Of a stretch of DNA of 64,000 nt, positions 13,758 to 49,005 are shown one piece after another. Source of the stretch: Mustelus asterias (lineage: Eukaryota). The stretch lies in contig NC_135804.1 in the NCBI RefSeq assembly GCF_964213995.1, positions 59,520,001 to 59,584,000 of the forward strand. The letters are read 5' to 3'. A model generated the notes under the pieces. That model was not told the origin of the DNA. It saw only the letters and a list, made by a program, of their open reading frames with translations, and ran no database searches. The translations under genes and the position numbers were made by a program. The stretch's first letter is position 1. Each line of letters opens with the position of its first letter.

Positions 13758-13812
13758 ATGTCGCTGAGAACTGCAGTTCAGTGTATGGTTCTTCTGTGGA
13801 TGGTCTGGACAG
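13758..13812 (+). CDS. Gene A exon 1: leader peptide [18 protein letters not shown](G)
   Basis: ATG at 13758, hydrophobic core, CAG|GTACTG phase-1 donor. Same 55-nt length as the paralogous exon 43778-43832. Confidence 0.8.
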
Positions 13813-16800
13813 GTACTGTTGCTTGTTATATGTTGCCATTCAGAATACCTTAATTTCTATTTTAGAATATTCGCAAAGGTTCTACGTTAAAAATTAGATG
13901 CGTTACAGCTCCAATTCGATCGTTGGTGCTTCTTAATTGTTCTTGTACTTTACTTATCTTAGTTTTTGTTTTCTTTGACGCATACAGTTCATCGCCGTTC
14001 TTTTTTTATAGGTGCGAAAGTAACATGGAGCAACGTGGATCAGTTCCCTAAACATTTGACGGTTGCCAGGGCTGACAATGTTTCCATGTTCTGCACATTT
14101 CCCATATTTGAAGACGCTCCTGAAGGTTCTTGGTGGAAACGGGGCGAGGAATCTGTTCTGGAACCAGACAGCAGAAAGAAAATTTATCTAAAGAAGGGCA
14201 GTAGTTCATTTGAAGTTCTGAATGCGAGTGTTGCAGACTCCGGAATGTATCACTGTTCAGTAAAACATCAACAGAATAAGATTGGGGATGGAAGTGGCTC
14301 CCAGCTCACCGTGTGTGGTAAGTATCACTGTACCGCGGAAAGGATGCTTTTCAGCTGTGTGTGATTTATGTAATTTGAACATATCACGAGATGAAAATCT
14401 GGATTCGTTTTTCGCTGCTGGTATTTCATTTCTGTTGACCTGCAGGTTCAACGGCCGTCAATTGCCTGTCTCCTGATTCGCACCACTGCCCAAGATCAAC
14501 TTCACCCACTCCCTGTCTATCCTCGTGACGTTATAAAGTGTTTTTCATCCAACGAGTGCAGTTGGTTCAGTTATCACTGTTACTGAAAGTGATACTGACA
14601 TAAAAAGATCGCATCAACTCTGAGATTGAGATTAATCAATTGGATGAGTTGCTCGATTTTCTTGTCATCGAAACATCAGTGCCTAAGTGCAAACATTGAA
14701 CAATTTTAACACGGCCTCTGTCGAATCTTTTGTAAACGATTAATTCATGTCAATAGGTCCCAGAATTTACCTTTGTTAAAAGCTCAATAGTGTTAATCTC
14801 TTCTCATTGAATGGGCGGCACGGTAGCACAGTGGTTAGCACTGCTGCTTCACAGCTCCAGGGACCTGGGTTCGATTCCCGGCTTGGGTCACTGTCGGTGT
14901 GGAGTTTGCACATTCTCCTCGTGTCTGCGTGGGTTTCCTCCGGGTGCTCCGGTTTCCTCCCACAGTCCAAAGATGTGCGGGTTAGGTTGATTGGCCATGC
15001 TTAAAAATTGCCCCTTAGAGTCCTGAGATGCGTAGGTTAGAGGGCTTAGCGGGTAAATGTGTAGGGATATGGGAGTAGGGCCTGGGTGGGATTGTGGTCG
15101 GTGCAGACTCGATGGGCCGAATGGCCTCCTTCTGCACTGTAGGGTTTCTGTGATTTCTTTCTGGGTTTCTGTGATTGCTTTCAATATTTCACGCACCAGT
15201 TAACTTTTGAACTCATGCTTTATATTGCCAAGCTATTATTTTTTAAACTGAATTGTCCAAATTTTGATTTGAGAAAGATTCTTATACATGCGTATGAAGA
15301 GGATGGAGTTAAGTCTGACACATCGAGTTGAGGTCTATCCACCATAATGTAACTGAATATCAAAGTAACCGAGCAAGATGGAAAGGCCTACTCCTGTTCC
15401 TATCTTGGTACTCAATGCTGCACGCTTGTGTCAGTTGATAACATTGTTTGAGATGCCAAACTTTCACTGAATATTCCTGCAATGCATATCAGAGGGCATG
15501 CGGTGATCTTAACCTGAATGTTGCTTTTCAACCGAAGTCCTGGGATATACAGGACAGTGAAGATATCAATTGCCTGCTTTGAGACCCTTTGGCGTCAGCC
15601 AGTTGGATTCCTCAAAACCAATAATTCCAGACAGACTATCACCGAACGTTCCTGTGTATTCCTGCTGTTTAAATCAGGATTTCTATTTAAATTCCCCAAA
15701 CCTGACACGGAAGTTACAAGACAGCAGAAAACAATATCCTCATTCGCTTGCACGGATAATCTATAGCATTGCCTATTACAGCTAAAAAAGAATCTATGGT
15801 TTTAAAAAATGCAGGCATTCTGAATCACTTGGAGTAAAGGTTAACATTATTAACTCTTTAAACTGTCACCGCTCTGTGTTCCTGCTTTTTAAACTGTCAC
15901 CGCTCTGTGTTCCTGCTTTTTAAACTGTCACCGCTCTGTGTTCCTGCTGTTTAATCTGTCGCCGCTCTGTGTTCCTGCTTTTTAAACTGTCACCGCTCTG
16001 TGTTCCCACTCTTTAAACTGTCACCGCTCTGTGTTCCTGCTTTTTAAACTTCTTTCCCAGTGCACTCTGAGGAAGGGGAAAAAGGGTTCAGTGTTCCATT
16101 GGAGCAATTCTTTTTCTTTGTAGCAGTAAGTTATATGGAGGGGATGGAAGTGAAGGCAGTGCAATGTGCCTCCTGCAGAATGTTTGAGGTGAGGGACACC
16201 GTCAGTGTGTTTGCTGATTACACCTGTGGGAGATGCACCCACCTGCAGCTCCTCCAAGACCGCGTTAGGGAGCTGGAGCTGGAGTTGGATGAGCTTAGGG
16301 TCATCAGGGAGGCAGAGAGGGCCATAGACACAAGCTTCAGGGATATGGTTGCTCCAGGGAATGAAAATAGATGGGTGACAGTGAGAGGGGCTGGGAGGAA
16401 GCAGTCGGTGCGGGGTCCCCTGTGGTCGTTCCCCTTAGCAACAAGTATTCCACTTTGGATACAGGTGAGGGGGGCGACCTACCAGTGGTAAGCCGCAGTG
16501 ACCAGATCGCCAGCGATGAGTCCGTCCCTGTGGCTCAGAAGGGAAAGGGGGAGAGCGCTAGAGCTATAGTTATTGGGGACTCGTTTGTTAGAGGGATAGA
16601 TAGGAGGTTCTGTGGCAACAAGAGAGACTCACGGATGGTATGTTGCCTCCCGGATGCCAGGGTCCGTGACATCTCCGTCTGTGTCTTCAGGATTCTAAAG
16701 GGGGAGGGGGAACAGTCACTAGTCGTGGTGCACGTCGGCACGAAAGACATCGGTAAGAGAGGGGACGGGGATTTAAAACAGCTATTCAGGGAGCTAGGGT

Positions 16801-19800
16801 GGAAGCTGAGAGCCAGGACAAAACAGGTTGTCATCTCTGGTATGTTGCCGGTGCCACGAGATAGCGAGTTGAGGAACAGGGACAGAGTGCAGTTAAACAC
16901 ATGGATGTAGGGATGGTGTAGGAGGGAGGGTTTCAGCTATGTGGATAATTGGAACACTTTCTGGGGAAGGTGGGACCTGTACCAACAGGACGGGTGCACC
17001 TGAACCAGAGGGGCACCAATATCCTGGGAGGGAAATTTGCTCCAGCTCTTCGGGGGGGTTTAAACTAATTTGTCAGAGGGATGGGAAAAGGAGTTGTAGT
17101 CCGGAGGTCAGTGAGTGTAGTGAGGTACTGGGAAGGGTATCATGGTCAAAGGTGGGTACCAGCAGACAAGAAGGTGGGTTGAAGTGTGTCTACTTCAATG
17201 CAAGGAGCATCCGATATAAGGTAGGTGAACTTGGGGCATGGATTGGCACTTGGGACTACGATGTTGTGGCCATTACGGAGACATGGGTAGAACAAGGACA
17301 GGAATGGTTGTTGGAAGTTCCGGGGTATAGATGTTTCAGTAAGTGTAGGGTAGCTGGTAAAAGAGGTGGGGGAGTGGCACTGTTAATCAAGGAGAGTGTA
17401 ACGGCTGCAGAAAGGCATTTCGAAGGGGATCTGCCTACAGAGGTAATATGGGCTGAGGTTAGGAATAGGAAAGGAGCGATCACGTTGTTAGGAGTTTACT
17501 ATAGGCCCCCAAATAGTAATAGAGATGTGGAGCAAGAAATTGCGAAGCAGATTATGGATAGGTGTGGAGGTCACAGGGTAGTTGTCATGGGGGACTGTAA
17601 CTTTCCAAATATTGATTGGAGCCTTTATAGGTCGAATAGTTCGGATGGGGAAGTTTTTGTGCAGTGTGTGCAGGAGGGATTCCTGACACAATATGTGGAT
17701 AAGCCGACAAGAGGTGGGGCCACATTGGATTTGGTAATGGGAAATGAACCGGGCCAAGTGTTGGATTTGGTTGTGGGAGAGGACTTTGGAGATAGTGACC
17801 ACAATTCGGTGTCTTTTGTTATTGCAATGGAGAGGGAGAGGGCCATGCGGCAGGGCATAGTTTACAATTGGGGGAGAGGTAATTATGATGCAATCAGGCG
17901 GGAATTAGGAAGCATAGGATGGGAACAAAAATTGTCAGGGAAAGGCACGAATGAAAAGTGGAACTTTTTCAAGGAACAAATACTGCGTGACCTTGATAGG
18001 TATGTCCCTGCCAGGCAGAGAGGAAATAGCCGAGTGAGGGAACCATGGTTCACAAAAGAGGTGGAATGTCTTGTCAAGAGGAAGAAGGAAGCGTATGTAA
18101 CGTTGAGAAAACAAGGTTCAGTTGGCTCGATGGAGGGTTACAAGTGAGCAAAAAATGAGCTGAAAAAGGGGCTTAGGAGACCTAGGAGGGGGCATGAGAA
18201 GTCCTTGGCGGGTCGGCTCAAGAAAAACCCCAAGGCTTTATACTCTTATGTGAGGAATAAAAGAATGACCAGGGTGAGGTTGCGGCCGGTCAAGGATGGC
18301 AGTGGGAATTTGTGCATGGAGTCAGAAGAGATAGGACAGGTGATGAATGAATACTTTTCTTCGGTGTTCACCAAGGAGAGGGGCCATGTTTTTGAGGAAG
18401 AGAGGGTGTCACAGGCTGATAGGCTGGAGGAAGTAGATGTTCGGAGGGAAGATGTACTAGCAATTTTGAATAAACTGAAAGTTGATAAGTCCCCTAGGCC
18501 TGATGAAATATATCCTAGGAGTCTTTGGGAGGCAAGGGATGAGATAGCAGAGCCTTTGGCATTGATCTTTGCGTCCTCACTGTCCACGGGGATGGTGCCA
18601 GAGGACTGGAGAGTGGCGAATGTGGTTCCTCTGTTTAAGAAAGGGAATAGAAAAGACCCTGGTAATTATAGGCCGGTTAGTCTTACTTCCGTTATCGGTA
18701 AGTTGATGGAAAAGGTCCTCAGGGATAGGATTTATGACTATTTAGAAAGATGCAGCTTAATCCGGGATAGTCAGCACGGATTTGTGAAGGGCAAGTCTTG
18801 CCTCACAAATTTGATAGAATTTTTTGAGGAGGTAACTAAGTATGTAGATGAAGGTAGTGCAGTTGATGTCATATACATGGATTTTAGTAAGGCGTTTGAT
18901 AAAGCCCCCCATGGTCGTCTTATGAAGAAAGTAAGGATGTGTGGGATAGAGGGAAGTTTGGCCGATTGGATAGGTAACTGGCTATCTAACAGAAGACAGA
19001 GGGGGGTGGTGGATGGAAAATTGTCGGACTGGAAACCGGTAACCAGCGGAGTGCCACAGGGATCAGTGCTTGGTCCTCTGCTATTTGTCATTCTTATAAA
19101 TGACTTGGAGGAGGGGGCTGGAGGGTGGATCAGTAAATTTGCTGATGACACCAAGATTGGTGGAGTAGTGGATGAGGTGGAGGGCTGTTGTAGGCTGCAA
19201 AGAGATGTAGATAGGATGCAGAGCTGGGCTGAAAAATGGCAAATGGAGTTTAACACTGACAAATGCGGGTGATTCATTTTGGTAGGACAAATGTAAATGT
19301 GGATTACAGGGTCAAAGGAAGGGTTCTGAAGAATGTGGAGGAACAGAGAGATCTTGGGGTTCATATCCATAGATCTCTGAAGGTTGCCACTCAAGTGGAT
19401 AGAGCCGTGAAGAAGGCCTACAGTGTGTTGGCGTTCATTAACAGGGGGTTTGAGTTTAAGAGCCGTGGGATTATGCTGCAACTGTACAGGACCTTGGTGA
19501 GACCAAATTTGGAATATTGTGTGCAGTTCTGGTCACCTCACTACAAGAAGGATGTGGAGACACTGAAAAGAGTGCAAAGGAGATTTACCAGGATGCTGCC
19601 TGGTTTGGAGGGTAGGTCTTATGAGGAAAGGTTGAGGGAACTTGGGCTTTTCTCTTTGGAGCGGAGGAGGTTGAGAGGAGACTTGATAGAGGTTTGTAAG
19701 ATGATGAGGGGGATAGATAGAGTGAACGTTCAAAGACTATTTCCTCGGGTGAATGGAGTGGTAACTAGGGGGCATAACTATAGGGTTCATGGTGGGAGAT

Positions 19801-22729
19801 ATAGGAAGGATGTCCGAGGTAGGTTTTTTACTCAGAGAGTGGTTGGGGAGAGGAATGGACTTCCTGCAGGGATAGTGGAGTCAGAAACTTTAGGAACATT
19901 TAAGAAGCTATTGGATAGGCACATGGAGAACTTCGGGATGATCGGGAGGAAATGGCTTGATTTGAGTTTCAGACAAAGCTCGGCACAACATCGTGGGCCG
20001 AAGGGCCTGTTCTGTGCTGTACTGTTCTATGTTCTATGTTCTATTATCTTGAAGTTAAAAATTACCCGTTTAACAATAGGATAAATAACGAAACATTTTC
20101 GTAATAAAGTCAGATAAGTTGTGACAGTCGATCTAGCTGACACAATTAGTATGAACTTTATATTCATTTACGGGTTTTATTCATTTACTTGCTGGGCCAG
20201 CATTCACTGCCCATCCCCACTCCAGAGGGAATTTGAGATCAATCACAGGCCAGGTAAGAATGGCAGATTTCCTTCCCCAAAGGAAAACATGGAACCAGAT
20301 GGGTCGTTACGCCAATCGACATTGGTTTCATGGTATTTCCAGATTTTTATTCGATTCAAATTTCACTATCCAACTGTGGGCTTTGAAACCAGGTCCCCAG
20401 ATCTGGCTCTGGGTCTCTCCAGTGACAACAGCACTACACCACTGCTGTTCCGTAAACAACTGTAATGCAGATTTTAATCCATACATTTATAATCAACATT
20501 TATAATGCCTTTATTGACATTAGAGACATTTCGGCGATTCACGGTCTTCATAGTCAGAGGATAATGTGCGTGGTAATAAATGAAATATTCGAACATCAAC
20601 GAATTTTAAAGTAGGCACGCAAAACAACATACGGCAAGTACATTATGCGAAAAACGAAAGAGGACTCCACTGCTCCGTTCTGACTGCGTGGCCCAGGCAT
20701 CTGTATACACATAGAGATGAATTGCATTCGGGCCATCGCTGCTAACCCCAATAGTTTGCCAGGACCTGATGTTTCCTTTCAATGTCGCGTACCTCCATGT
20801 ATGCGAACAATACCGCGAGATTCAGTCCCGCTGTTTACGATACACCCGCATACTTTGCAGTGCGCCGTTAAATTATTTCTAAAATGAATACAAACACGAT
20901 GTTTAAGAAATCACAGAGCGAATAACTATTTCCACTGTTAAGAGTGTAACATAATTGTTGCGGCATACAAACGCCAATGTGTTCTTTACATTAAAAATTA
21001 CCTTCTATTTCCCTGTTAAAGTTCCCCCAACCCCCCTGAAACTCGTTCAGGTTGAAGGGATTTCTGCAACTTCTCTGAGATTCGAGTGTAAAACGGCTGC
21101 CTTTTACCCGGAGGATTTCAAAATCTCCTGGCGCAGAGATGGTGTGGGAATTCTGGCCGGAATAGAAACTGTGAGACACAAGACAGTGGATGGTCTCCGA
21201 GAGGTCTCCAGCTCTTTGGAAGAGGCACAGCCTGCTTCGAGCCGAATAGTTTATACGTGCCTGGCATCTCATATCTCCCTTAAGGTGCCCGCCAGTGTCA
21301 GCTATATCGACATTCAAGGTAAGATTGGGCACATTTGCAGCAGCAAGTGCATTTGCAGCGTCCAACCTATAGTTATTTATTAAACATTTAGCAGGGCAGC
21401 TGTTCAAACACAAAGTTGCAGGGTTCTTTATTCTCAATGTCACATCAATGTAAATGAATTAAAATACCATGGTTTGTAACTGCAGGAGAGGGAATATTTC
21501 CCTGAAAAGATCTGAAACGGGAGGGCGATGTGCGAAGTACTCAAAACTGAAAGCTCATTTGTTATCAAATTCTTGCCAAATGAAATGAACGTACACATGA
21601 AATGGATCAGTTTTAGCAGTATCACTTTAATTGGACAATTCCTGTGTGGAACTTTAGCCAAGGATATCGTTCAAGGACATTTCCTCCATGATCCAGATCC
21701 TTTTGACCATTATTGAACTGTTTCTCTTTGATCCAAACACTAAACTTCGGGGGAAAAAAATGTTCCGCCTGGAGTTACATCATTCATTGAATTCCTTATT
21801 TCATTATTTTAACTCTCAAACTGCGAAGGCATAAAAATTGCTTCCAACGCTCCTCTGGTTGCAATTTCGGTTGTGGACCCTTTACTCCAATAAACAATAC
21901 CCTATTACAGTTATTAGCACTGTGGGTGTAAACTTTAAAAATGAGGAAACTACAGTGCAAGTACAGAGCATTTGGCGCTTGATCCGTGTTCTGGTGCGAG
22001 TGCATCTGCCATGAGGGAAACGACCCAAGCTACCAAACTGAATATCAGAATCCGAAAGCATAACTTTCGGCCTGATGAAGTTAACCGTGCGGGAAGATCA
22101 TAACCTGATCATCAGCGAGCTAAATTTTGATCGCTGAGGGCGGTGTTGTGTGACCGAGTGGTACTGTCCCACATTATTATTATAGGGTCCAGAGGAACAT
22201 TTCTGTTTTTTCCTGCACAGCCAAAAATAATTTTTAATTCATTTGTTTGGGATTTCTTTACCTATTTTGCTGTTACATCTGGTAGAAAGAACAAGCACAC
22301 ATATTATATCCTAAAATGGACATCAGTGTCCTATTTGAAGAGAAGCCAATTGCCGACAAAATGGCGCTGGCACCAAACAACAGGCTGTCTTGGAAGATGG
22401 AGTGGATTGTGTTAAAATGTTCACATGGTGCTCAATTTGCAGAGCGTCTTTTGAGGGTATTTTCCATTCGCTCGACTTTGGAAATTTAATATCGGTTACA
22501 AAGTTTAGAGTAGCAATTGTATGGAGCTCTTTCATGTCCAGAAGCCAGCACTATTTGGTTTCATTCAATAATTCATATGTACAGACAATTTATGTGTATA
22601 TTTTAATCCTGCACTGCAGATAACAGTTTCCGGAACATGATGATTTTACGGCTTGTTCTGGGTTGTTTGATAATTCTTGGATTGCTGGGCATAATTGTGG
22701 ATGGACCATGTAGCATCTTTCAAATGAAG
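13758..22729 (+). CDS. Gene A: non-rearranging VJ-C1-TM Ig-superfamily receptor, join(13758..13812,14012..14317,21022..21318,22620..22729, plus an unidentified 3' exon)
   Basis: Four exons with canonical AG/GT boundaries and compatible phases (1,1,1,0) give 256 open codons: signal peptide + V-set + C1-set + TM. The exon structure is matched by a paralog at 43778-49005. Confidence 0.88.
14012..14317 (+). CDS. Gene A exon 2: V-set Ig domain with germline-encoded J-like G strand
   Basis: Acceptor ttttttttatag, donor G|GTAAGT, 306 nt. B-strand Cys (SMFC), C-strand WW, DSGMYHC (DxGxYxC) and GSGSQLTV J-like motif. Confidence 0.92.
14813..15157 (+). mobile_element. HE1-type SINE (V-SINE)
   Basis: A box TAGCACAGTGG, B box GGTTCGATTCC, V-domain TGTGGAGTTTGCACATTCTC..GGGTTTCCTCCGGGTGCTCCGGTTTCC, CR1/HER1-like tail. 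Confidence 0.9.
15857..16050 (+). repeat. 31-bp tandem repeat x6 (TTTAAACTGTCACCGCTCTGTGTTCCTGCTT) at the CR1 5' end
   Basis: Directly visible head-to-tail units without spacers. Confidence 0.95.
15857..20043 (+). mobile_element. Full-length CR1 LINE in the V-C1 intron of gene A (mildly disabled)
   Basis: ORF1 CxxC..CxxC, leucine zipper and GDS esterase; ORF2 APE (YFNARS, YRPP, SDH) and RT (FADD). In-frame TGA at 18145-18147, frameshift near 19268, (TTCTATG)n tail. Confidence 0.95.
20170..20445 (-). mobile_element. tRNA-derived SINE (same family as 10280-10640)
   Basis: GGCAGATTTCCTTCCC core and degenerate tRNA head on the minus strand. Confidence 0.6.
21022..21318 (+). CDS. Gene A exon 3: C1-set Ig domain
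   Basis: Acceptor ccctgttaaag, donor G|GTAAGA, 297 nt. C1 signature [16 protein letters not shown]...DG..VSSSL...[11 protein letters not shown]. Confidence 0.92.
22620..22729 (+). CDS. Gene A exon 4: transmembrane exon (D)[36 protein letters not shown]
   Basis: Acceptor cactgcag, donor AAG|GTAAGG (phase 0). Hydrophobic stretch containing Arg; paralogous to 48902-49007. Confidence 0.85.
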
Positions 22730-24306
22730 GTAAGGGGACGCCGTTTTAATTCAGCAAACCACGTTCAAAGTATATACACAGTTAACACTGGTGGGCTGGA
22801 AATGGGAAATGTGCTTTTGTCCGTCGTTTCTCCGGTAATTTAAGGCTCACGGGTAGTGATATTAAATTTTGCTATGAAGTAACTCACAACATAGAAGGCC
22901 ACCACTTTTACCACGACAATGCTCATATTTAGTGCTGCTGAAAAATGACAGAGATGAAACGTTAAATCTGTTTCCCTTCCAAATTGTGCCGCCTGATCTG
23001 CCGAGCTTTTGCCACGTTTTCTGCTTTTATTTTATATTATATTAGTTTTCGTATTAAATTCAGTTTCGGGCATGATATGCCAAGTAATAAACACCGAATG
23101 TCAGTTTTGAACGCTGGTTTAGTTTTATCTCCTTTCGTGAAAATGATTTTGGTTTCAACTTCTCACTTGAGATATTTGAGCACAAACTTCCGGCTAGCAT
23201 TGCAGCGCAGCACTGCTGGCGGTTTGGTCTTTTTTCAACGACGAAAAACGAGATCCTCTGCTTTATATGTTGGCCGTAAAAGCCCAATTGGTCATTTCGT
23301 AACTGAGCATCGTGGAGCTCACTCGTGTCCTGATCAGAAATTAGTTTTCAATCTACTTCGCTGAAACCGATTCATTTTTCATTCATTTCAGTAATCTATG
23401 TGGTTAGGAACGTCCCGTGTTGTTTTTTTAAGAACACGTTGCACTTTCAGCTGCTGTGAAAGACTGCATGCCAATATTGATCCGTTCTTCTGCTTTGCAC
23501 GATTTTTATGTATGGTTGGAAAATTTATAATACAAACGCCACTTTCTGAGCACTGTTTTCCATTTTGCGTTAAACTCTGCTAAAATTATGCTGTTAGGAA
23601 TCTGGCAGAGGTACTTTATTTCGGAAATATGCCTCTCATGATGAAATTTTCAGCACGTTTACATGTATAATTTTATCTATTTTGCTTCCCTTCTCAAGGC
23701 ACTGTGTCTAGCTGCGATGCCCACAATCTTCTCGCCCCACCAAATCGTTTCGTATTACTGTTAAGGCGTGAGCGTCACGTTGTTGAACTCAGAGTCGTCA
23801 TTTTTAGATTAGCAATTTAAATCGAGGCCCTGGGATAAGCATCTGGAGTAGAATGTAATGCTAATTTCCCCCAGCTATCCCTGAAAACCCAGACAGCTTC
23901 ATATTTTCAATTGTTGCAGAACAGTGCATATAGTATACGACATAGAGGACACCTAACCTGCCATCTTACGATGAGTACGTCTCGGTGCGACAGCGAAGGG
24001 TTGCATACGTATTCATTCAGTGCTACATGGAATTTTTTTTCACATGTGCAAGAGATCACGGGATACCAAGCGACAGCTTGAAAATTTCAATTCAAATATA
24101 TAACAAGAGCCTTTTTTTAACTTAAATGTCATTCTACATTGAATGAGTGGAAATCCGTCAATTCCGGATAGGTAATGAGGAGTTAACGTTTACCTTTTAT
24201 ATAAAAGGGATGTAACACATGATTACTCACACGCACAATAATCAAAGTTTTCGCCAAATGAAACTGAAAACGCAAATTCAACTTTAGCAAGCTGATATTT
24301 TGTAAT

Positions 24307-25943
24307 CCCATTTTCCAGCTTTTGGTCCATAGACCTCTATGCTATGGCATTTCAAATGATCGTCTAAATACTTCTTAAATGTTGTGCGGGTTCCCGCCTC
24401 TACCACCCTTTCAGTCAGTGAGTTCCAGATGATCATTACCCTCTGGGTGAAATGATTTCCTCTCACATCTCCTGTAAACCTCCTACCCCTTAACTTCAGT
24501 CTATGCCCCCTGATTATTGACCCCTCTACTAAGAGGAAATGTTCCTTCCGAGCCACCATACTTATGCCCCTCATAATTTAATTCATCTCAATCAGGTCCC
24601 CCACCCCCACAGCCTTCAGTGATCCACGGAAACCAACCCCAGCCTATTCAGTCTCTCTTGTTAACTTAAATGCACCAGGCCCAGCTGAATCTCCTCTGCA
24701 CTTTCACTCGTGCAATCAATTCTTCCCTATCGTTTGGCGACCAGAACTGCATACACTACTCCAGCTATTGCCTAACTAGAGTTCATACAGCTCCATCATA
24801 AACACCCTGCTCTAATATTAAATGCCTCAGCTGATGAAGACAAATATCACATATGTTTTCTTAACCGCTTATCTACCTGTCCTGCTATCATCAGAGATCT
24901 ATGGAGATGCACACCAAGTCCCTCTGATTCTTTGTACTCCCGAGGATCTGATCATTGGTTGTACATTCCCTTACCTCTTAGTGCTCTAAAATATATTACT
25001 TCACACTTTTCGAGGTTGAATTTCATTTGCCACCGTTCTGCCCATCGAACCAACCCGTCCATATTCTAAGCCTTTGCTCCTCGCAGTTTGCCACACCACC
25101 AATTTTTATGTCCTCTGCGAACCAACTTATCATACCACCTATATCCACGTCCAGAATATTATTGTATACTACGAAAAACAAATGGCCCAGTACCAATCCT
25201 GTGGAAGACGACTGGACACAGGCTTTCAGTCACAAAAACAATCTACCAACATCACGCTCTCCCTCCTGCCGCTAAACCAATTTGGCATCCAGTTTGTTAA
25301 ATTGTCCTGGATCCCATGGCAATCCCATCTTTATCAGCCTCCCATATGGGACCTTGTCAAAAGCTTTACTGACGTCTATGTAGAATACACCAACTGCACT
25401 ACCCTCACCGACACACCGAATCACCTCCTCGAAAACGTCAGTCACATTTGTAAGGGATGATCTCCCTTTGACAACACTGTGCTGATTATCCTTGATTAAT
25501 TCTTGTGTCCCCAAGTGCAGATTAATTATGTCCCTCAGAACTTTTTCCAATAGTTTCCTATCACAGAAGTTAGTCTCACTGGCTTGTAATTTCCTGTTCT
25601 TTTCCTACTTCCCTTTTTGAAAAACGGTACCACATCAGCTATCATCCAGTCCTCTCGTGCCTCTGCTGTTGGACTTTAACCTGGTGTTGTGAGACTTCTT
25701 ACTGGGTTACCCCAGTCCAACGCCGTCATCTCCACATTATGGCTCTGCTTTGGCCGGGGAAGATTAGAAAATTATCGCCAGAACCGCTGCAACCTATTCC
25801 CTTGCCTACCACAGCAGCGTAGGATGCAGCTCATCTGGGCCTGGGAATTTATCAACATAAGCCCCGTTAAAACCTCCTCTCTCTTAATGTTTATCAACAT
25901 CAGGCCCGTTAAAACCTCCTCTCTCTTAATGTTAAGTTCTAAC
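24307..25943 (-). mobile_element. Degraded CR1 (A-specific insertion) containing a Penelope-like fragment (~25667-25745) and a 42-bp tandem duplication (25848-25931)
   Basis: RT fragments (VSKAFDKVP); flanks rejoin in unit B at ~50051-50090. Confidence 0.8.
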
Positions 25944-26579
25944 GTTGGAAATGGTGGCATATTCATTAAAATTAAATTTGCCTCGGTCTTGGTTGTATTT
26001 AGTGTAAGGATATTTTAATAATTACAGTCGAATAACAACGAAGGGATGTAATTGGAGACAGTTCCATTAAGTTAGTAATAGTTTGATGTGATACAGATGA
26101 GCGTGCATCTATGAGTCCAGAAATATAGATGCAGTGCTGAATTTACTTGCGGATCTTGGGAAATTAATGCTGACGCAATTAAGTGGGAACTGTTTGTGAA
26201 TATAAAATTGAAACTGTAATTAAAAGATAGTGCATCGTTTGGAAAACAAATTTCAATTTTATTTTTGATCGGTTAAGATCGATTGATAATCTCCGCCTCT
26301 GTTGATATCGACACGAGAGCAATACCTTAAAATTGGTTAAGAAGAACACGTGTTCCGGTACAGGCGGAAGAAGAAACACACGAAGCAAGGAACAAGGTGA
26401 AGGAGCCACAATCGAGACGAATCAGGGGCGCATCCAGCATTCGCTCACAACCATTTTCAGCTGTATTTAGACACACTTTTTTCCTACAGCATTAGAATAT
26501 AAAAATACAGTTGTTAGTTGGCGCCCGTGCATAAAATGAGTCAGTGCATTCCTTGTAAGTGCTGTAACAAGAATGGAGA

Positions 26580-29752: not shown

Positions 29753-30071
29753 CATAGAATCCTGCAATGCAGAAGAAGGCCATTTGGCCCATTGAGTCTG
29801 CACCGACCAAAATCCCACCCAGGCCCTATCACCATAACCCCATGCATTTACACTCGCTAGTCCCCATGACACTAAGGGGCAATTTAGCATGGCAATCCAC
29901 CTAACCCGCACATCTTTGGATTGAGGGAGGAAACAGGAGCACCCGGGGGAAACCTACGCAGATACGGGGAGAACGTACAAACTCCACACAGACAGTGACC
30001 CAAGTCAGGAATCGAACCCCGGTCCCAATTTCTGTGAGGCAGCAATGCTAACCACTGTGCCACTGTGCCGC
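29753..30071 (-). mobile_element. HE1-type SINE
   Basis: Reverse complement of the 14813 element. Confidence 0.88.
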
Positions 30072-31325: not shown

Positions 31326-31344
31326 TTATGAACAGTTGAGTTCC

Positions 31345-42154: not shown

Positions 42155-42555
42155 GCTTTTCCCGATGGACGATGGTGGAAGATGGTCCGGGGTGCGTGGG
42201 GTCCTTGATTATGCCGGCTGCTTTTCCGAGGCAGCGGGAAGTGTTGACAGAGGAAGGTCAGAGGGCAAGAATCCTGCAGCGAGTAACTCGCCTCCTGACA
42301 ATCCAAAGCGTGTTCATCATCACAAGGTCCAAGTCAGGAGTGTGATGCGATAATCACCACTTGCCAAATGTCTGCATCATGTCAATGGATAGGAGGCTGG
42401 TTTGAGTGATGGACTGGGCTTCATTCACGACCCTTTGTAGTTTGTTGTGGTCTTGGACAGAGCAGGAGCCATACCAAGCTGTGATACAACCAAAAAGAAT
42501 GCTTTGTATGGCGCATCTGTCGAAATGGGTGAGAGTTGTAGCGAACATGCCAACT
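42155..42555 (-). mobile_element. Rex1-like LINE 3' fragment
   Basis: ORF fragment SILFGCITAWYGSCS..KLQRVV, homologous to ~55370-55590. Confidence 0.7.
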
Positions 42556-43645
42556 TGTACAATAAACGGTTACATTTCTCTCATTGAGCCTGTTTCAGTG
42601 ATAGCGCAATGTTTTCCAATGCGATTAAAACGACTGCGCTGGGTAAATTAAATATTAAATAATGTTTACAGCCCTTTCTGCTTACATTTCTGGTCAGGAA
42701 GATTCGGCTGCGTTAGAACAAGCGTTAATACTAAGTAATTCGGTAACATTCACTGCCAAAATATGCCGTGTACCATAAACCATGACCGAGCCATGGATAA
42801 ATGTGCCGTACGTCAAGTGATATTAGTCACAAAAACAGTGACACACAGTGGTCTGCTTTGGTACGAGGAAGCATCTTCGTAAGAGAAAACGTACTCATGG
42901 TCTCGCCACTCCGATTGTGCAATAGACAAGGCGCAAACCTATTGTTTTCTGAACGAAGAATAGCTTTAAATGCAGGTGGGTATCGTTCTTGTCGCCAGAC
43001 TCACAGTAACTTCATTGCAGGGTTAATATAAGTCTACTTGTGAAACGAATAAATAAATTTTAAAAACTCAATGCAACGAATGCCACACGGCATCGCAGGA
43101 GGGAAATCTAATAAACTGAAATCAATTTAAAACTTAAAACGCCATTAACAAGAAACACTATTTACTAACAAATTACTTTGTGGATGTGATAAATGTGAAA
43201 ACTGTCGTAAACCCTCCCATGACGCTTTGAGTTGCAGTAAAAATCCACTCTTGTTGTCGTCGACGCACTGGAATGAGGAATGGGGAGATGATCAGGAGTT
43301 TTAGCCAGAATTGTTATTCCAGTAATGTCGCTACACGTTGTTTGAGGTCTCGATCACACTCGGCCCTAAGTACTCAGGACGAAAGGTTTGCACATTTTGT
43401 GCTCCGACAGGAAGTAGAATGTCTTTGATGAAGTGCGGCAGGGCCGCCTGCGGCCTGCATCGTTATTTCCAAGATTGAATGAAGGGTCGATGGACTTGAG
43501 GTGACAATGATAATTACTGGAACGAAGTTTCCAGAAAGTGGCTGAAAAACATTACTCTTCAAGAGACAGCTTTTCGGCTGGCATTAAGGTCAGCTTCTAC
43601 TTCGCAGACACACACAGAGAAATGTAAACGCATCCAATACGCTGT

Positions 43646-43678
43646 TTTAGTCATGTGATCTCTCATGTCGTGGTCACA
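43646..43678 (+). promoter_or_regulatory. Conserved proximal promoter motif of gene B (GTCATGTGA E/M-box + TGGTCACA)
   Basis: ttagtcatgtgatctctcatgtcgtggtcaca, at the same distance from the ATG as in gene A. Confidence 0.4.
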
Positions 43679-43777
43679 TGTTTCATATATTTAACCTTAA
43701 GACCTATTTCTTACGCAAACTATTGTGGATACCATTCTCATTTGCAGCAAATGGACAAGTAACGCATTATTTGCAAC

Positions 43778-43832
43778 ATGTCGATACAAGTTACAGTTCA
43801 CTACATGGCTCTTCTGGGCGTGTTTTGGCCAG
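43778..43832 (+). CDS. Gene B exon 1: leader peptide MSIQVTVHYMALLGVFWP(A)
   Basis: ATG at 43778, CAG|GTACAT donor; homologous to the gene A leader. Confidence 0.8.
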
Positions 43833-46800
43833 GTACATTTAGTTATTAGATGCTGCCGGTTTCACAACAGCAAATCTTAATTTAAAAGACTCGACAGCTG
43901 TTACCCACTGTACAATTGGATACTGTGCTTCTCTAATTCGATTGCTTGTTTTTATAATTTACTTCTCTCAGTTGTTTTTCTTTATCTGTTACCTCACCAC
44001 CTTTGTTACTTTCCTGACAGCCGCCGGAGTAACTTGGAACGAAGTGGTTCAGATCCCTAAATACTTGAAGGTGAGCAGAGGCGCGAATGCTTCCATGTTC
44101 TGCACATTTCCCATATTTCAAGATGTGCCCGATGTTCGTTGGTGGAGACGCGGAGAGCAATCCTTTCTCCAACCAGACAGCAGAAAGCGATTTGATGCGA
44201 ATAAGGGAAGTAGTTCGCTTGAATTCCTGAATGTGACTTTTGCAGATTCCGGAGTGTATTATTGTAAAGTAAAATATCCAGAAAAATCTAATGAAACTGG
44301 AACTGGCACCCAGCTTACTGTATACGGTAGGTGTTATTGTAAACGGGTGGGTTTCAGCTCAGCGCCATATATGCAATTTGATCCTTTTTTATCACTGGAG
44401 GAAAAGTAAGAGCGAATTCCTTTTACAGAACACTGGACTGTCCTCCATTGACCTTGATGCACAGTGGATATATTAGTACGAATAAAAGCAAATGGTGGCG
44501 GATGCTGGAATTTGAAGCAAAAGCAGAAAATGCTGGAGAACCTCAGCAGGTCTGATAGCCTGTGTAGATAGAGAACAGAACTAAAGTTTTAAATCTGGAT
44601 GACCTGCTCTGACGAACGGTCGTCAAGTCTCGAAACATTAGCTCCGTTCTCTCTCCACAGATGAAGACAGAGCTGTTGAGATTTTCCAACAGTTTCTGTG
44701 TTTGTTATTTTAGATTCGAAATCATGTCATGGAAAAATGCGAAATAAAGAGACAACATTTTGAAAAAAGTCAGCAGGCCAAGGAGCTTATGTGGGGAGAA
44801 AAAACGCTTTCATTGTCGATTATGAAAATCGATCTGAAACGTTAGCTCGGTTTCTCGACACAGATGTTCCCTTACCGGCTGAACATTCTCCGTATTTTCA
44901 GTTTGTATTTGAGATTTCCTGCCTCTGCAGTGTTTTGTGTTGATGGTTGAATGGGATTTTAGTGTCTCGTTCCTTCATGTCACAATGACGGTGCCACAAC
45001 TCAACAATGGAATCAACTTTAACACCTCACAGGACAAACCTTTTGCAAATTTTGAAGATCAGTTTATTAATCTGAACAAGGAAGGAATATTCACTGCGTG
45101 CTCGGTGACACCCGCAGTTAGAACTGCGAAGAGTAACAAACCAAAACGAGCCCAAAATGGAGGTGACTGCAAAGAGAAATAAGTTTTCGATGGAAGTCAG
45201 CCCAGTCATTCACGGTATATCATTTTGTTGCAGGTTCCCGTTTCCAAATCGTCTCTGTGCCAAGTTCGTTGAGCTAAATCAGGAGGCGAAAATCAATTGG
45301 GATTCTTACTCCTAACTGCTCCCGGTTTAAGTTGAACAATTTGGTAATATTTACAAGGGACTAGACTGTAGCTAAATTCCACCCAAAGGTCAGAAGCGTT
45401 GCGTTATTTTGCCAGTCACCTTAAATCGGTCTTCTGGTTATCGACTCTTGTATCACTGAAAACACTTTCTCTTTATTGACTTTATCAAAACTGATCAGAA
45501 CTTTCAAAGTCGCTATCCAGCCTCCTCTAAACATTATCACGTCTAAGTAGAACAACCGTAGCTTATTCCGTCTCTGCATATAATCCAAGTCCTCTCACCC
45601 TGGTAAAGATCCAACATTCTCAGTGCCTTCATAATAAACTCAGGTGAAAACTCCCCAAGCACAGCGACGAATTTTCCTCAAACCAGATCTTTTTTTCCTC
45701 TAACTGCTCGAAACTGCCGATGTAACACTTTCTATACCCCTGTGACCGAAATTTGTGATGGACAAAGTTTTGCTATGTTTCGGTGTCAACCCTATGTCCG
45801 CAGTTTAGACTTGGTACATGTGTCCATTTATATGTTTCACATTCCAAACTTTTCACAAACCGGATTCTGCAACCCAGTGAAAGGAAGGATCTTGCCCTCA
45901 ATGCTGGATTCCACTCCGGGTTCGAGACTTTGCAGGGCAGTAAAGGTGCCCGATGCTTTTGTTTGAACCTCTTGGATACGCCATCTGAATTTCCTATGAT
46001 ATTGTCAGAACTGATAAAGCGGAGGCTGGATATCACCGAACATTCATATAAACATCTGGGATCCCTTATTGTAATTCATGATTCCCATGTACACTTCCCA
46101 TGCCCAGACGAAAGTTGTGGTAGGAGATCAAGGGAACACTGGCTTCTTTCTACCCAGCAGGTTAAAACAAGCCCATATGAAAATAATTGAAGAATTCTGA
46201 GGCTTTACTGGAATAACAGCCAACGTAATATTTAATGTTAATAATGCATGTAAATTACTAATTTTCTACTACTACAATGTCGCAAAAGTGGCCTCGTAAG
46301 TAAAATATATTAAACAGATTGATTATAATAAATAAATCTATGTAAACCTAACAAGGAACTTTACAAGGTGATTGTGGATAGAGTGGGCGGACTGATAGAG
46401 CGTTTCGCATCAGAAAATGGTAAATTTGGACTGCTCGAAGAAAAATCTTCTCCAGACAAAATGCGTTCAGCTGACCGAATGACGCTACAGAAGAGCACAC
46501 GCCTGGAATTTACGGCTCAAAAAACAAAATACTGCGGATGCTGGAAATCTGAAATGAAAACTTAGTCAGACCTGATGTGTTTACCCAGCATTTTTTGTTT
46601 TCATCCCTGGAATTAACCCCTGGGTTATTTTTCATATTCGGTTTCAGTCATCCGTATGGGTATTATGATCTATATAGATATATGTAATTATCAAAATATA
46701 ATCTTTCCTGGTTTACAAAATAATCGAACCTTCGCCCCTCCTCGAGAAAGATCCTTTCATGAATGATGCAAGAATTGAAACCTTCAGCATAGACACTGAA

Positions 46801-49005
46801 ATGTTATATAATCAACAGTATCTTGTTTGGAGTCGATTTAGATATCGGAGATATTTTGATTTCACACACATTTTGATTTTACACATTAACCGAAAAAATC
46901 TGTTTTGAAACTAACTAAATATTCGAAGCGGCCATTTTTTCAAATCATCACACTTTAGTACGTCAATGATTCTTGCAGAAAAAAAACCTTAGTAGAACCC
47001 AATGTTCGTGCAGCCTGTTTGGTGCTCCCTTTCTGATATATTCAGGCCGAAATCTCACTCGAGGTCACTGCTGCCACACACAATTTCGCGCTAGGATCTG
47101 CTGCTTTATTTCCGAACTGTGATACTTTCTTCGCTGGTTGTTATCAAGTCTGGGAGATTGTTCATCTTTGTGTATCGCTTGCTAGACATCCGGCATTTTT
47201 GCTGAGCATCGGATAACATTGTATGCAATAAATGCACGTCTGAAGTTTCAAAAGCACGATAACTGTTATTGCCGTACGAGTGTAAAAGCGTATCGAGGTT
47301 AAGCCACTGAGAATATTCTCCTTTCAATTCAATTTTTTTTCATCCTGTTAAAAGTTCCCCCAACACCACTGAAAATCGTTCCGATTGAAGAGAATTCAGC
47401 GACTTCTCTAAGATTCGAGTGCAAAACGGCTGCATTTTACCCGGAGGATTTAAAAATCTCCTGGCAAAGAGATGGTGTGGAAATTCTGGCCGGAATAGAA
47501 ACTGTGAGAAACGAGACAGTGGATGGTCTTTTTGAGGTCTGCAGTTCTTTGGAAGAAGCGCAGCCTCTTCAGAACGGAGTCGTTTATACATGTCTGGCAT
47601 CTCATATCTCCCTTCAGGTGCCCGCCAGTGTCAGCCACACGGTCATGCAAGGTAAGGTTGGAAACATTTACTGCAGCGAGTGGGGGGAAATGCTCCAAAC
47701 TGTAGTTATTTATTAGATAGGAAGGGGCAATTGTTTAAACTTGAATATACGGGGTGAATGTGGACTTAATCGCGATGTCACATCAATGAAAATGAATTAA
47801 AATAATCAAGATGGTCGTTGGAGAAGGGAGAATATGTCCCTGAAAAGATCTGAAAAGGGAAGTTGATGTGCGAACAGTTCGAAAGTGAAAGCTTATTTCT
47901 CACCAAATTCTTACCAAATGAACTGGATCGGCTTTAGTATAGTCATTTTTAATTGGGACCGTTCCTGTGTGCAACTTTAGCCAACATCGTTTGAGGGCAT
48001 TTCCTCCACAATCCAGATACTTTTGACCATTATTAACCTATTTCTCTTTTACCCAAACATAAACTTCGGAAACACCTTCTTTCATCTGGTTTTACTTCAT
48101 TCACTGAATTCCCTCGTTCTTTAAATTTTTGGAAATGCTGAAGCAGGAAGAATTGTTTCTCATGCTCCTCTGGTGACAATTTCGGTTTTGGACCCTTTAC
48201 TCCAATAAACAGTTGTTCATTACACTGTGGGTGGAAACTTTATAAATAAAGGAATAACAGTGCAAGTACAGAGCATTTGGTACATGTTGCCTGTATTGGT
48301 GACAGCGTGTCTGCCATGCCAGGAGCCGACCCAACCTACCAGGGCGAATATCAGAAAACCTAAACTATGTGTCGTCCTGATTAAGTTAGCCGATCACAGA
48401 CTGATCACCAGCGAGCTTTATTTTCATCGATGAGGACGGTGTTCGGTGCCCAACTTGTAGTGTCCCACGTTATTATTATAGAGGTGCACTTTTGTGATTT
48501 TTCTACCCAGCCAAAAATATGTTGGATTTTTTTTAAATTGTTTATTGGCATTGCTCATAACCGACCGGAGAGAACAGAGCAAACACATTCTGACTGAAAA
48601 TGGACATCATTGTCCTCTGAGATTTGAAGAAAAGTCAATAGCCAAAAGAATGGCGCTGGCACCGAGCAACAGGCTCTCTCGCAAGGTGGAATGTACTATG
48701 TGAACACGTTCACTTGATTCTCAGTTTGGGGATTGTATTTTGAGGTTATTATCGTACGTTAATTGAATTTAATATCGGGTCCCAAGTTTAGAGTAGCAAT
48801 TGTATGGATCCCTTTCAGTTATAGAAGCCAGTGCTATTTGCTTCCATTCGACAATGCTGATATAAACAATTAAATGTACATATTTTAATATTGCATTGTA
48901 GAGTACAGTTTCCGCAATGTGATGATTTCACGGCATGTTCTCGGCTTTTTGATAATTCTTGGACTGCTGGGCATAATTGTGAACCATGCAACAGATTTCA
49001 ATTGA
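43778..49005 (+). CDS. Gene B: non-rearranging VJ-C1-TM Ig-superfamily receptor, join(43778..43832,44021..44326,47355..47651,48902..49005), 253 aa
   Basis: 55+306+297+104 = 762 nt open frame ending in TGA at 49003-49005; all splice sites canonical. Confidence 0.9.
44021..44326 (+). CDS. Gene B exon 2: V-set Ig domain with J-like G strand
   Basis: Acceptor ttcctgacag, donor G|GTAGGT, 306 nt. SMFC, WW, DSGVYYC and GTGTQLTV motifs. Confidence 0.92.
44480..44935. mobile_element. Penelope-related foldback (inverted) short elements with a degenerate hammerhead at ~44606-44645
   Basis: Arms GCAGAAAATGCTGGAGAACCTCAGCAG.. and ..CTGTTGAGATTTTCCAACAGTTTCTG are inverted; CTGACGA..GAAA core. Confidence 0.55.
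47355..47651 (+). CDS. Gene B exon 3: C1-set Ig domain
   Basis: Acceptor cctgttaaaag, donor G|GTAAGG, 297 nt. [16 protein letters not shown]...DGLFEVCSSL...[10 protein letters not shown]. Confidence 0.92.
48902..49005 (+). CDS. Gene B exon 4: TM and 7-aa tail (E)[33 protein letters not shown]
   Basis: Acceptor cattgtag; TGA 49003-49005 lies 2 nt before the donor AG|GTAAGA at 49008. Confidence 0.85.

What the first reader, a model, noticed from the sequence alone, without database searches (positions are those of the whole stretch)
13758..49005. Tandem cluster of non-rearranging antigen-receptor-like genes (leader-VJ-C1-TM) in a shark-type genome
Seen: two spliceable genes with open exons, each with a single V exon already containing a J-like G strand (GSGSQLTV / GTGTQLTV, no RSS or intervening DNA), one C1-set exon and a TM exon. 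This is the layout of one TCR chain, fixed in the germline. Established: C1-set domains are largely confined to Ig, TCR, MHC/b2m, tapasin, SIRP and some B7-family proteins such as B7-H6; germline VJ-type V domains occur in NKp30/NCR3; VJ-C1 genes (PRARP/VJC1-type) are discussed as candidates for the pre-RAG antigen-receptor precursor. Inference: this is an expanding innate receptor family combining an NKp30-like VJ domain and charged TM with a C1 domain, probably uncharacterised or loosely annotated as SIRP-, Ig light chain- or NCR3LG1-like.
Basis: partly seen in the sequence, partly recalled or inferred. Interest (0 to 1): 0.9.

Follow-up and report, generated by a model that had tools for sequence, protein, structure and literature searches.

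The report
Shark germline VJ-C1 activating receptor genes
Two neighbouring shark genes encode membrane receptors built like one T-cell-receptor chain but fixed in the germline; they belong to a large, loosely annotated shark and ray receptor family with activating and inhibitory members.

Summary
Two tandem + strand genes (13758-22729 and 43778-49005, both probably extending further 3') each have four exons. These are a 55-nt leader, a 306-nt V exon ending in a J-like G strand, a 297-nt C1-set exon, and a TM exon with an Arg. All junctions are AG/GT in phase 1. No RSS lies near either V exon. A RefSeq model from Scyliorhinus canicula (P0002) joins the same exons at the same points.

The genes belong to a family found across cartilaginous fish. 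All 28 word-search hits appear to be chondrichthyan, as are 26 of 30 looked-up HMMER hits. NCBI names them inconsistently: SIRP-alpha-like, B7-H6-like, Ig-lambda-like, TAPBPR-like, TCR-beta-like.

The family has Arg-TM short-tailed forms, like the two here, and ITIM/ITSM long-tailed forms on near-identical ectodomains. That makes it a paired-receptor family, closest in design to SIRPs but with one C1 domain.

No RNA evidence could be obtained; the four runs found behave as DNA. Likeness to NKp30 was not shown. First-reader notes of this scan record the same family elsewhere in this genome. Key papers (Kinlein 2021, Fu 2019) were not held, so earlier description cannot be excluded.

The parts
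13758..13812 (+). Gene 1 leader exon (ATG 13758; 55 nt, ends in phase 1; donor GT 13813)
   Evidence: weak tblastn matches of family leaders
14012..14317 (+). Gene 1 V exon with built-in J-like G strand ([10 protein letters not shown]), 306 nt, phase 1 in and out
   Evidence: Pfam V-set 31.6 bits and I-set 32.2 bits; 95% identical to P0001, 73% to P0003; no RSS heptamer nearby
21022..21318 (+). Gene 1 C1-set exon, 297 nt, phase 1 in and out
   Evidence: Pfam C1-set 23.3 bits, cut-off 21; PDB matches UrIg2, TAPBPR, Ig light chains
22620..22729 (+). Gene 1 TM exon ([37 protein letters not shown]), Arg in the helix; 110 nt, ends in phase 0 at donor GTAAGG
   Evidence: 78-82% identical to the TM of P0002/P0003
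26272..26328 (+). Gene 1 remnant of the family's terminal exon: acceptor AG changed to CG, stop at the second codon, no AATAAA after it
43778..43832 (+). Gene 2 leader exon (55 nt, phase 1)
   Evidence: 68% identical to the P0003 leader
44021..44326 (+). Gene 2 V exon with built-in J-like G strand (ETGTGTQLTV), 306 nt
   Evidence: Pfam V-set 50.6 bits; 79% identical to P0002
47355..47651 (+). Gene 2 C1-set exon, 297 nt
   Evidence: Pfam C1-set 34.3 bits; 78-81% identical to P0002/P0003
48902..49007 (+). Gene 2 TM exon ([34 protein letters not shown], stop 49003-49005, two bases before the conserved donor)
   Evidence: DNA contigs of two runs cover the exon end without gaps (records 8 and 14)
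50398..50470 (+). Gene 2 conserved terminal exon. In phase 1 it reads GKDRLIISASVHNCTRAIP-stop (stop 50454-56), followed by AATAAA at 50465-70. It would be in frame only if C1 is spliced directly to it, skipping the TM exon, which would give a secreted form
   Evidence: the same C-terminus occurs in P0003, P0006, P0008 and P0018
13612..28000 (+). Duplication unit, copy 1. It aligns with 43635 to about 50856 in blocks of 67-80% nucleotide identity; the V-C1 intron is not alignable
43635..50856 (+). Duplication unit, copy 2

Best explanation
The window holds two tandem paralogues of a multigene family of non-rearranging type I membrane receptors found across cartilaginous fish. The ectodomain is a V domain with a germline J-like G strand followed by one C1-set domain.

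Both genes are of the family's activating type. They have an arginine near the outer end of the TM helix, an acidic or His boundary at the inner end, and a cytoplasmic tail of a few residues.

Inferred mechanism, none of it shown here: the V domain binds a still unknown ligand. The TM arginine pairs with the TM aspartate of an ITAM adaptor of the FcR-gamma, CD3-zeta or DAP12 kind, which signals. Sister genes carry near-identical ectodomains on an uncharged TM with ITIM/ITSM tails and deliver the opposing signal through SH2 phosphatases. This is a paired-receptor system like SIRP-alpha/SIRP-beta, KIR or LILR.

Gene 2 may also make a secreted form by skipping the TM exon.
For: Shown:
- Exon structure, splice phases and open frames.
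- V-set and C1-set domains, exon by exon.
- No RSS near the V exons.
- RefSeq protein P0002 is colinear with the same junctions.
- Family range: 27 of 28 rows show a chondrichthyan species and 1 name is cut off. Of 30 looked-up HMMER hits, 26 are chondrichthyan.
- Two forms exist. Eleven stored proteins carry the Arg-TM motif R-x-[ILV]-L...II-V-[DE]-H with tails of 6-49 aa. Many others have an uncharged TM plus tails with LTYAAL- or TEYAQL-type motifs.
- S. canicula P0003 (Arg-TM) and P0005 (other TM) share 203 of 219 ectodomain residues.
- The act/inh label changes at least 7 times on the C1 tree.
- Purifying selection between the two genes: dN/dS is 0.45 for V and 0.44 for C1.
- Each gene has its own S. 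canicula counterpart in the V tree: gene 2 with P0002 (SH-aLRT 99), gene 1 with P0001 and then P0003/P0005 (97-98).
- The terminal exon and polyA signal of gene 2 are conserved.
Against: - No RNA evidence. No listed run is on record as RNA. The four runs laid cover introns like exons and show no splice joints.
- The 3' end of gene 1 is damaged: the terminal-exon acceptor is lost and a stop is present. Its TM exon ends in a different phase from its relatives, so it may be decaying.
- The TM exon of gene 2 is out of frame with the family's terminal exon and stops early.
- Adaptor pairing, ligand and cell type are inferred from other receptor families, not tested.
- The act/inh labels used come from a crude pattern rule; 54 of 106 proteins were left unclassed.
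Confidence: 0.7

Rival explanations
1. They are true members (co-orthologues) of the SIRP family, so the SIRP family dates to the jawed-vertebrate ancestor and is not a separate shark invention.
For: NCBI's automatic names give PTPNS1-like or SIRP-beta-like for 10 of the 28 rows, and again. The features match: a V with a J-like strand, a C1-set domain, paired forms, and inhibitory relatives with four spaced tyrosines (for example TAYATL, TVYAQT, LTYAAL, AVYAEV in P0012). From recall, these resemble SIRP-alpha's two [IL]TYADL-type and two [TS]EYAS[IV]-type motifs. One relative, P0004, has two C1 domains. The Atlas lists a 'SIRBL protein' cluster among the look-alikes of P0002.
Against: There is one C1 domain, not two. 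The TM charge is Arg, not the Lys of SIRP-beta (recalled). No SIRP chain is among the best 60 PDB matches of V or C1, as single exons or as family profiles. No tetrapod SIRP was identified among the best 150 HMMER representatives as far as looked up. A 2026 survey dates the SIRP family to Tetrapoda (PMC13262535, passages read). No SIRP sequence could be obtained, so no tree was made.
Confidence: 0.3
2. They are the shark 'NCR3 (NKp30) family' already described by Kinlein et al. 2021 (nurse shark, GenBank MT914154-MT914161), so the family is in print under that name.
For: The V domain is compact and scores as I-set as well as V-set. The G strand reads G-x-G-[ST]-x-L-x-V. There is a TM arginine and a short tail, as in NKp30 (recalled). 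Nurse shark NCR3 genes exist as a multigene set (accession list in PMC12227049, passages).
Against: PMC12227049 calls NCR3 an 'MHC-linked VJ domain gene' and does not call it VJ-C1. Neither it nor PMC10751288 lists a VJ-C1-TM family when discussing VJ-C1 candidates. None of the named rows is called NCR3-like; some are called 'NCR3 ligand 1-like'. Human NKp30 is absent from the best 60 PDB matches. This scan's MHC-type notes all lie on other pieces of the genome (unchecked).
Confidence: 0.2
3. One or both genes are unexpressed relics (young pseudogenes) of the family.
For: Gene 1 has lost the terminal-exon acceptor and polyA signal. Gene 2 has a stop two bases before the TM exon's donor, and its TM exon length is not a multiple of three, unlike relatives such as P0008. 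No RNA was seen.
Against: All eight leader, V, C1 and TM exons are open with intact splice sites. dN/dS is 0.44-0.45. Short, variable tails are normal for the Arg-TM class, at 6-49 aa. The early stop of gene 2 still leaves a complete TM and a 7-aa tail. P0002 of S. canicula also ends after a short tail.
Confidence: 0.2
4. The two genes encode the two chains of a germline-encoded TCR-like heterodimer.
For: They are tandem, with divergent V (57% identical) and similar C1 (78%). The domain layout is that of a TCR chain.
Against: There is no cysteine in the short connecting piece between C1 and TM. Both chains carry the same basic TM residue rather than complementary charges. Each has a separate S. 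canicula counterpart alongside inhibitory paralogues, as expected of a birth-and-death receptor family.
Confidence: 0.05

Closest known systems
SIRP family (SIRP-alpha, -beta, -gamma; PTPNS1)
   Same: N-terminal V domain with a J-like G strand, followed by a C1-set domain. Clustered paralogues have similar ectodomains and opposite signalling parts: a four-tyrosine ITIM tail in relatives and a basic TM residue with a short tail in the two window genes. NCBI's commonest automatic name for the family is SIRP-alpha-like.
   Different: One C1 domain instead of two. Arg instead of Lys in the TM (Lys recalled). A much larger expansion, seen only in cartilaginous fish so far. No sequence-level grouping with SIRPs could be shown here.
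UrIg / UrIg2 (non-rearranging shark VJ-C1 genes; PMC12227049, sections read)
   Same: Single-exon VJ domain with a split leader, and C1-set domains. UrIg2 (PDB 9dmx) is the best whole-chain PDB match of the gene 1 C1 exon (E 1.1e-9). Its third C domain scores 36.7 bits against the family C1 profile.
   Different: UrIg has three C domains and is secreted. UrIg2 has nine or more C domains. Here there is one C1, a TM with Arg, dozens of paralogues and paired inhibitory forms.
NKp30 (NCR3)
   Same: Germline VJ-type V, TM arginine and short tail; an activating innate receptor (features recalled).
   Different: NKp30 has no C domain. It is not among the best 60 PDB matches. No relative is named NCR3-like.
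Unnamed VJ-C1-TM proteins of bony vertebrates (P0161, caecilian Rhinatrema, 'uncharacterized'; P0158, source unnamed); possibly the PRARP family of Fu et al. 2019 (paper not seen)
   Same: Colinear V(J)-C1-TM. P0158 is 31% identical to P0002 over 243 residues, pairwise E 3e-28. Pfam finds V-set and C1-set. There is a basic residue in the TM and a short tail.
   Different: Lys, not Arg, in the TM. They form a long separate branch in the V tree (SH-aLRT 100). Whether they are PRARPs was not tested.
TCR and Ig light chains
   Same: Leader-V(J)-C1-(TM) layout with phase-1 exons. The best single-domain match of the family C1 profile is an Ig lambda constant domain, at 38.8 bits.
   Different: No RSS and no separate J segment. 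No connecting-peptide cysteine. The genes are germline-fixed.

Membership tests
Rearranging antigen receptors (Ig/TCR) | V and J as separate segments flanked by RSS | tested here: not met
   The J-like strand is continuous with V in one exon that ends at a splice donor. No heptamer lies within about 60-130 nt of either V exon.
Rearranging antigen receptors (Ig/TCR) | C1-set constant domain | tested here: met
   Pfam C1-set 23.3 and 34.3 bits, cut-off 21. Family profile against Ig lambda C: 38.8 bits.
SIRP family | V domain with J-like strand followed by C1-set domains | tested here: met
SIRP family | Two membrane-proximal C1 domains (V-C1-C1) | tested here: not met
   Only one C1 exon lies between V and TM in each gene, and there are no further family matches in the window. 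P0002 has the same V-C1-TM order.
SIRP family | Paired inhibitory (four-tyrosine tail) and activating (basic TM residue, short tail) members | tested here: met
   The window genes have Arg-TM and short tails. Relatives have ITIM/ITSM tails. The P0003/P0005 ectodomains are 92.7% identical.
SIRP family | Phylogenetic grouping or shared synteny with tetrapod SIRP genes | not testable with these tools
No SIRP appears in the best 60 PDB rows.
NKp30 / NCR3 | Single V domain joined by a stalk to the TM, no C domain | tested here: not met
   A C1 exon is present in both genes.
NKp30 / NCR3 | V-domain sequence similarity to NKp30 | tested here: inconclusive
   Human NKp30 chains are in the PDB (recalled) but are not among the best 60 rows for the gene 1 V exon or the V profile. 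Lower ranks are not shown by the tool.
NKp30 / NCR3 | Arginine in the TM and a short tail | tested here: met
UrIg / UrIg2 | VJ domain followed by three or more C1-type domains | tested here: not met
   There is one C1 exon. The defining architecture comes from PMC12227049.
PRARP (Fu et al. 2019) | V-C1-TM-tail genes of bony vertebrates (recalled from the title and citing text only) | not testable with these tools
   The paper is not held and no named PRARP sequence was available. Candidate relatives P0158 and P0161 are 31% identical.
B7-H6 (NCR3LG1) | Sequence grouping with B7-H6 | tested here: inconclusive
   B7-H6 (6yjp_C) matches the C1 exon at 24.4 bits, below TAPBPR (30.9) and Ig light chains (about 28). 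The V domain carries a J-like strand.

The most novel reading that the evidence does not exclude
This family, found across cartilaginous fish, is a surviving lineage of the pre-RAG type of VJ-C1 membrane receptor. Its C1 domain is closest to Ig light-chain and UrIg2 constant domains. Its inhibitory members carry a SIRP-alpha-type four-tyrosine tail. That would link SIRPs, the unnamed VJ-C1-TM genes of bony vertebrates and the antigen-receptor chains to one ancestral receptor that already worked as an activating/inhibitory pair, and it would move the origin of SIRP-type receptors from tetrapods to the jawed-vertebrate ancestor.
Probability: 0.2. Interest if true: 0.8.

Novelty: new variant of a known kind. 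Interest (0 to 1): 0.55.

Why it matters
Single-exon VJ domains joined to C1 domains are sought as relatives of the gene that the RAG transposon split to create antibodies and T-cell receptors. Recent work puts forward UrIg and UrIg2, with few copies per genome (PMC12227049).

This is a different case: a family of probably dozens of VJ-C1 membrane receptors per genome. It occurs in sharks, rays and chimaeras, has activating and inhibitory forms, and is hidden under inconsistent automatic names.

If it is related to SIRPs, it dates that checkpoint family much earlier than a recent survey does (PMC13262535). It also gives sharks a candidate NK- or myeloid-type paired receptor system, which is poorly known in this group.

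Tried and rejected
RNA evidence was tried and failed. The look-up of sequencing runs listed no RNA run. The four runs laid on 43700-49690 behave as DNA. Contigs cover introns, and the only joints link three high-copy repeats at 44.5-44.7, 46.5-46.7 and 49.5-49.7 kb.

A direct comparison with NKp30, SIRP, PRARP, TCR and IgL sequences was not made. The PDB searches show only 60 rows, and multi-domain chains fill them.

The Atlas gave only generic V-C1 and V-set look-alikes.

A search of this scan's notes for SIRP-region marker genes found nothing.

Considered and rejected:
- Germline-joined Ig light chain. A TM exon is present, no RSS is found, and the family has ITIM forms.
- Tapasin or TAPBPR. 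There is no N-terminal domain, and the proteins are about 260 aa.
- A third gene copy or inhibitory-type TM or tail exons in the window. None was found, and the best tail matches had E > 0.3.

Literature searches that found no description of this family. The searched library lacks Flajnik 2012 (PMC3709836), Kinlein 2021 (PMC8273117), Ohta and Flajnik 2015 (PMC4594805), the UrIg paper (PMC10530332) and Fu 2019. Supplements were not opened, and those of PMC10751288 and PMC12227049 may list such genes.

Full report
**What is there.** The window is typical shark-type DNA, full of CR1/LINE fragments. It contains two paralogous genes on the + strand.

| Exon | Gene 1 | Gene 2 |
|---|---|---|
| Leader | 13758-13812 | 43778-43832 |
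| V | 14012-14317 | 44021-44326 |
| C1 | 21022-21318 | 47355-47651 |
| TM | 22620-22729 | 48902-49007 (stop 49003-49005) |

In both genes the leader is 55 nt, V is 306 nt and C1 is 297 nt. Each of these exons ends in phase 1, and every junction is AG/GT. tblastn of each exon against the window finds only these two copies, and tblastn of all stored family proteins under 520 aa adds none.

**Not rearranging.** The V exons run from the A strand through ...[23 protein letters not shown] and ...YYCKVKYPEKSNETGTGTQLTVY straight into a splice donor. No RSS heptamer lies in 13950-14450 or 43950-44450. The three weak heptamer-spacer-nonamer matches in the window are far from the genes.

**Domains.** Exon by exon, Pfam gives V-set 31.6 and 50.6 bits (cut-off 26), with I-set nearly as good. 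It gives C1-set 23.3 and 34.3 bits (cut-off 21).
- Against the PDB, the best whole-chain match of the gene 1 C1 exon is UrIg2 (9dmx, E 1.1e-9). Its best single-domain match is TAPBPR at 29.5 bits, followed by Ig light chains. B7-H6 scores 24.4 bits.
- A 12-sequence family C1 profile scores 38.8 bits on an Ig lambda constant domain and 36.7 bits on the third C domain of UrIg2.
- The V exon and a 12-sequence V profile give only generic matches: I-set adhesion proteins, antibody and TCR V domains, and amphioxus VJ-C2. Neither NKp30 nor SIRP V domains appear in the 60 rows shown.

**Relatives.** The V exon alone found only P0001, a 135-aa unspliced ORF from ENA that is 95% identical. Using the mechanical ORF around the gene 2 V exon, scored on the V part, found P0002. 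This is S. canicula 'tyrosine-protein phosphatase non-receptor type substrate 1-like isoform X2', 259 aa and 79% identical in V.
- P0002 reads leader-V-C1-TM plus four residues, with joints where I placed them.
- With P0002 as query, the word search gave 28 proteins. Of these, 27 show a chondrichthyan species and one name is cut off. NCBI's names are listed under the first-reader verdict.
- HMMER against 1.84 billion representatives gave 1600 proteins at E <= 1e-3 and 63 at E <= 1e-30. Giant multi-Ig proteins also score through many stretches.
- Of 30 hits looked up, 26 are chondrichthyan: sharks of five orders, rays, skates and the chimaera Callorhinchus. One is a salmonid Ig-like protein, one is a caecilian 'uncharacterized protein', and two are unnamed.
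- Within each species, the members looked up sit on one large record, for example 12 of Heterodontus on a 99.65-Mb record.
- The nearest proteins outside cartilaginous fish, P0158 and P0161, are also V(J)-C1-TM, with a Lys in the TM. They are 31% identical to P0002.

**Paired forms.** The family has two membrane parts.
- The first, as in both window genes, has the motif ...R-x-[ILV]-L-x-[FIV]-L-[VI]-I-L...I-I-V-[DE]-H followed by 6-49 residues. It is found in 11 stored proteins.
- The second is an uncharged G/A-rich helix followed by long tails with LTYAAL-, TAYATL-, TEYAQL- and AVYAEV-type motifs.
- In S. canicula, P0003 (Arg-TM) and P0005 (the other TM) share 203 of 219 residues from leader to the end of C1.
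- By a crude pattern rule, 12 of 106 proteins class as activating and 40 as inhibitory, and 54 remain unclassed. That label changes at least 7 times on the C1 tree.
- From recall, the four-tyrosine tails resemble that of SIRP-alpha.
- No inhibitory-type TM or tail exon is present in the window.
- This scan's unchecked notes report an inhibitory neighbour about 23 kb upstream of the window, and further copies over more than 10 Mb of the same piece and on other pieces.

**History of the pair.**
- In the V tree, gene 2 groups with P0002 (SH-aLRT 99). Gene 1 groups with P0001 (97) and then with P0003/P0005 (98). The duplication is therefore older than the split from the S. canicula lineage.
- In the C1 tree both genes sit in one 24-row clade (95), close to all three S. 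canicula proteins.
- Between the two genes, dS is 0.60 in V but 0.29 in C1, and dN/dS is 0.45 and 0.44. This suggests purifying selection on both domains. It also suggests either homogenisation of the C1-TM half or exchange of V exons.
- The duplicated block runs from about 150 bp upstream of the ATG to about 1.8 kb past the TM exon of gene 2 (13612 to about 28000 against 43635-50856). LINE insertions interrupt it in gene 1.

**3' ends.** Relatives end in ...GK[DEG]RL.IS.S... (P0003, P0006, P0008, P0018). That exon lies at 50398-50456 in gene 2, with an acceptor AG, a stop, and AATAAA nine bases later.
- It is in frame with the phase-1 end of the C1 exon. Skipping the TM exon would therefore give a secreted form like P0006.
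- The TM exon of gene 2 is 106 nt, not a multiple of three, and it stops at 49003-05, leaving a 7-residue tail.
- In gene 1 the homologous piece (26272-26328) has lost its acceptor, has a stop at the second codon, and lacks the polyA signal.
- The TM exon of gene 1 ends in phase 0. If it is not spliced, it would read 37 more codons to a stop at 22841, with a polyA signal at 22861. This is unresolved without RNA data.

**Reads.** No RNA run is on record for this stretch. Four runs from one study, kept as contigs, cover exons and introns alike, so they are DNA.
- They confirm the locus, including the end of gene 2's TM exon, without gaps (records 8 and 14).
- They differ from the window at many sites.
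- Of the listed exon differences, V has E7K, I11V and V35A plus 2 synonymous changes. C1 has L18R and C62S plus 1 synonymous change. TM has 1 synonymous change. A further 92 differences were not listed.

**How it probably works (inference).** The proteins are type I receptors whose V domain binds a ligand and whose C1 domain acts as a spacer.
- The arginine four to five residues into the helix would pair with the TM aspartate of an ITAM adaptor, as for NKp30, NKp46 and Fc-alpha-RI (PMC6514059, passage, for NKp46).
- Sister receptors with ITIM/ITSM tails would oppose the signal.
- The ligand, cell type and adaptor are unknown.

**Known or new.** The kind is known: germline VJ plus C1 receptors (SIRP, PRARP, UrIg), and paired activating and inhibitory families.
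- What differs is the single C1 domain, the Arg-TM exon conserved across shark orders, the size of the expansion, and its restriction so far to cartilaginous fish.
- Nine full-text searches found no description of the family.
- The two Flajnik/Ohta-group papers I could read discuss VJ and VJ-C1 candidates without mentioning it.
- The most relevant papers were not held: Kinlein 2021 on the shark NCR3 family, Flajnik 2012, and Fu 2019 on PRARP. I put about a one-in-five chance on the family already being in print under the NCR3 name.
- The proteins themselves are already in RefSeq for many species.

Noticed in passing
window 16060-20084 (+): A CR1/LINE-like element with long sense-strand ORFs (402, 355 and 273 aa, with reverse-transcriptase-like motifs by eye) sits inside the 6.7-kb V-C1 intron of gene 1. 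The gene 2 intron is only 3.0 kb and does not align with it.
   Followed up: no
window 26678-27883 (-) and about 24284-25550 (-): Reverse-transcriptase ORFs (401 aa and fragments) are inserted in the duplicated block downstream of gene 1's TM exon. They account for the gaps in the gene 1 / gene 2 alignment.
   Followed up: partly
window 44500-44699, 46500-46699, 49500-49690: Three short stretches reach summed contig depths of thousands to tens of thousands in all four runs, and they are joined to each other in some contigs. They are copies of a very high-copy repeat in the introns and 3' flank of gene 2.
   Followed up: no
window 47541 (gene 2 C1 exon): The window allele has an extra cysteine (EVCSSLEE). 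Contigs of three runs read Ser there, which is the family consensus. Other listed exon differences are E7K, I11V, V35A and L18R.
   Followed up: partly
window 47914-47923: Insertion polymorphisms of 12 and 17 nt occur in the C1-TM intron and differ between runs.
   Followed up: no
window 13406-13471 (+): The N-terminal extension of a Heterodontus model (P0006 residues 3-24) matches at 64% identity about 300 bp upstream of gene 1's ATG. This may be a conserved 5' exon or UTR, or a shared repeat.
   Followed up: no
P0158 and P0161 (not in the window): Bony-vertebrate V(J)-C1-TM proteins with a Lys in the TM and a short tail. One is from the caecilian Rhinatrema, where the model is fused to an unrelated N-terminus. 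The other is from unnamed Logan contigs. They are the nearest relatives outside cartilaginous fish and may be PRARPs.
   Followed up: partly
P0004 (Chiloscyllium plagiosum): This family member has two nearly identical C1 domains in tandem, a recent C1 exon duplication. It shows that the number of C domains is plastic in this family.
   Followed up: no
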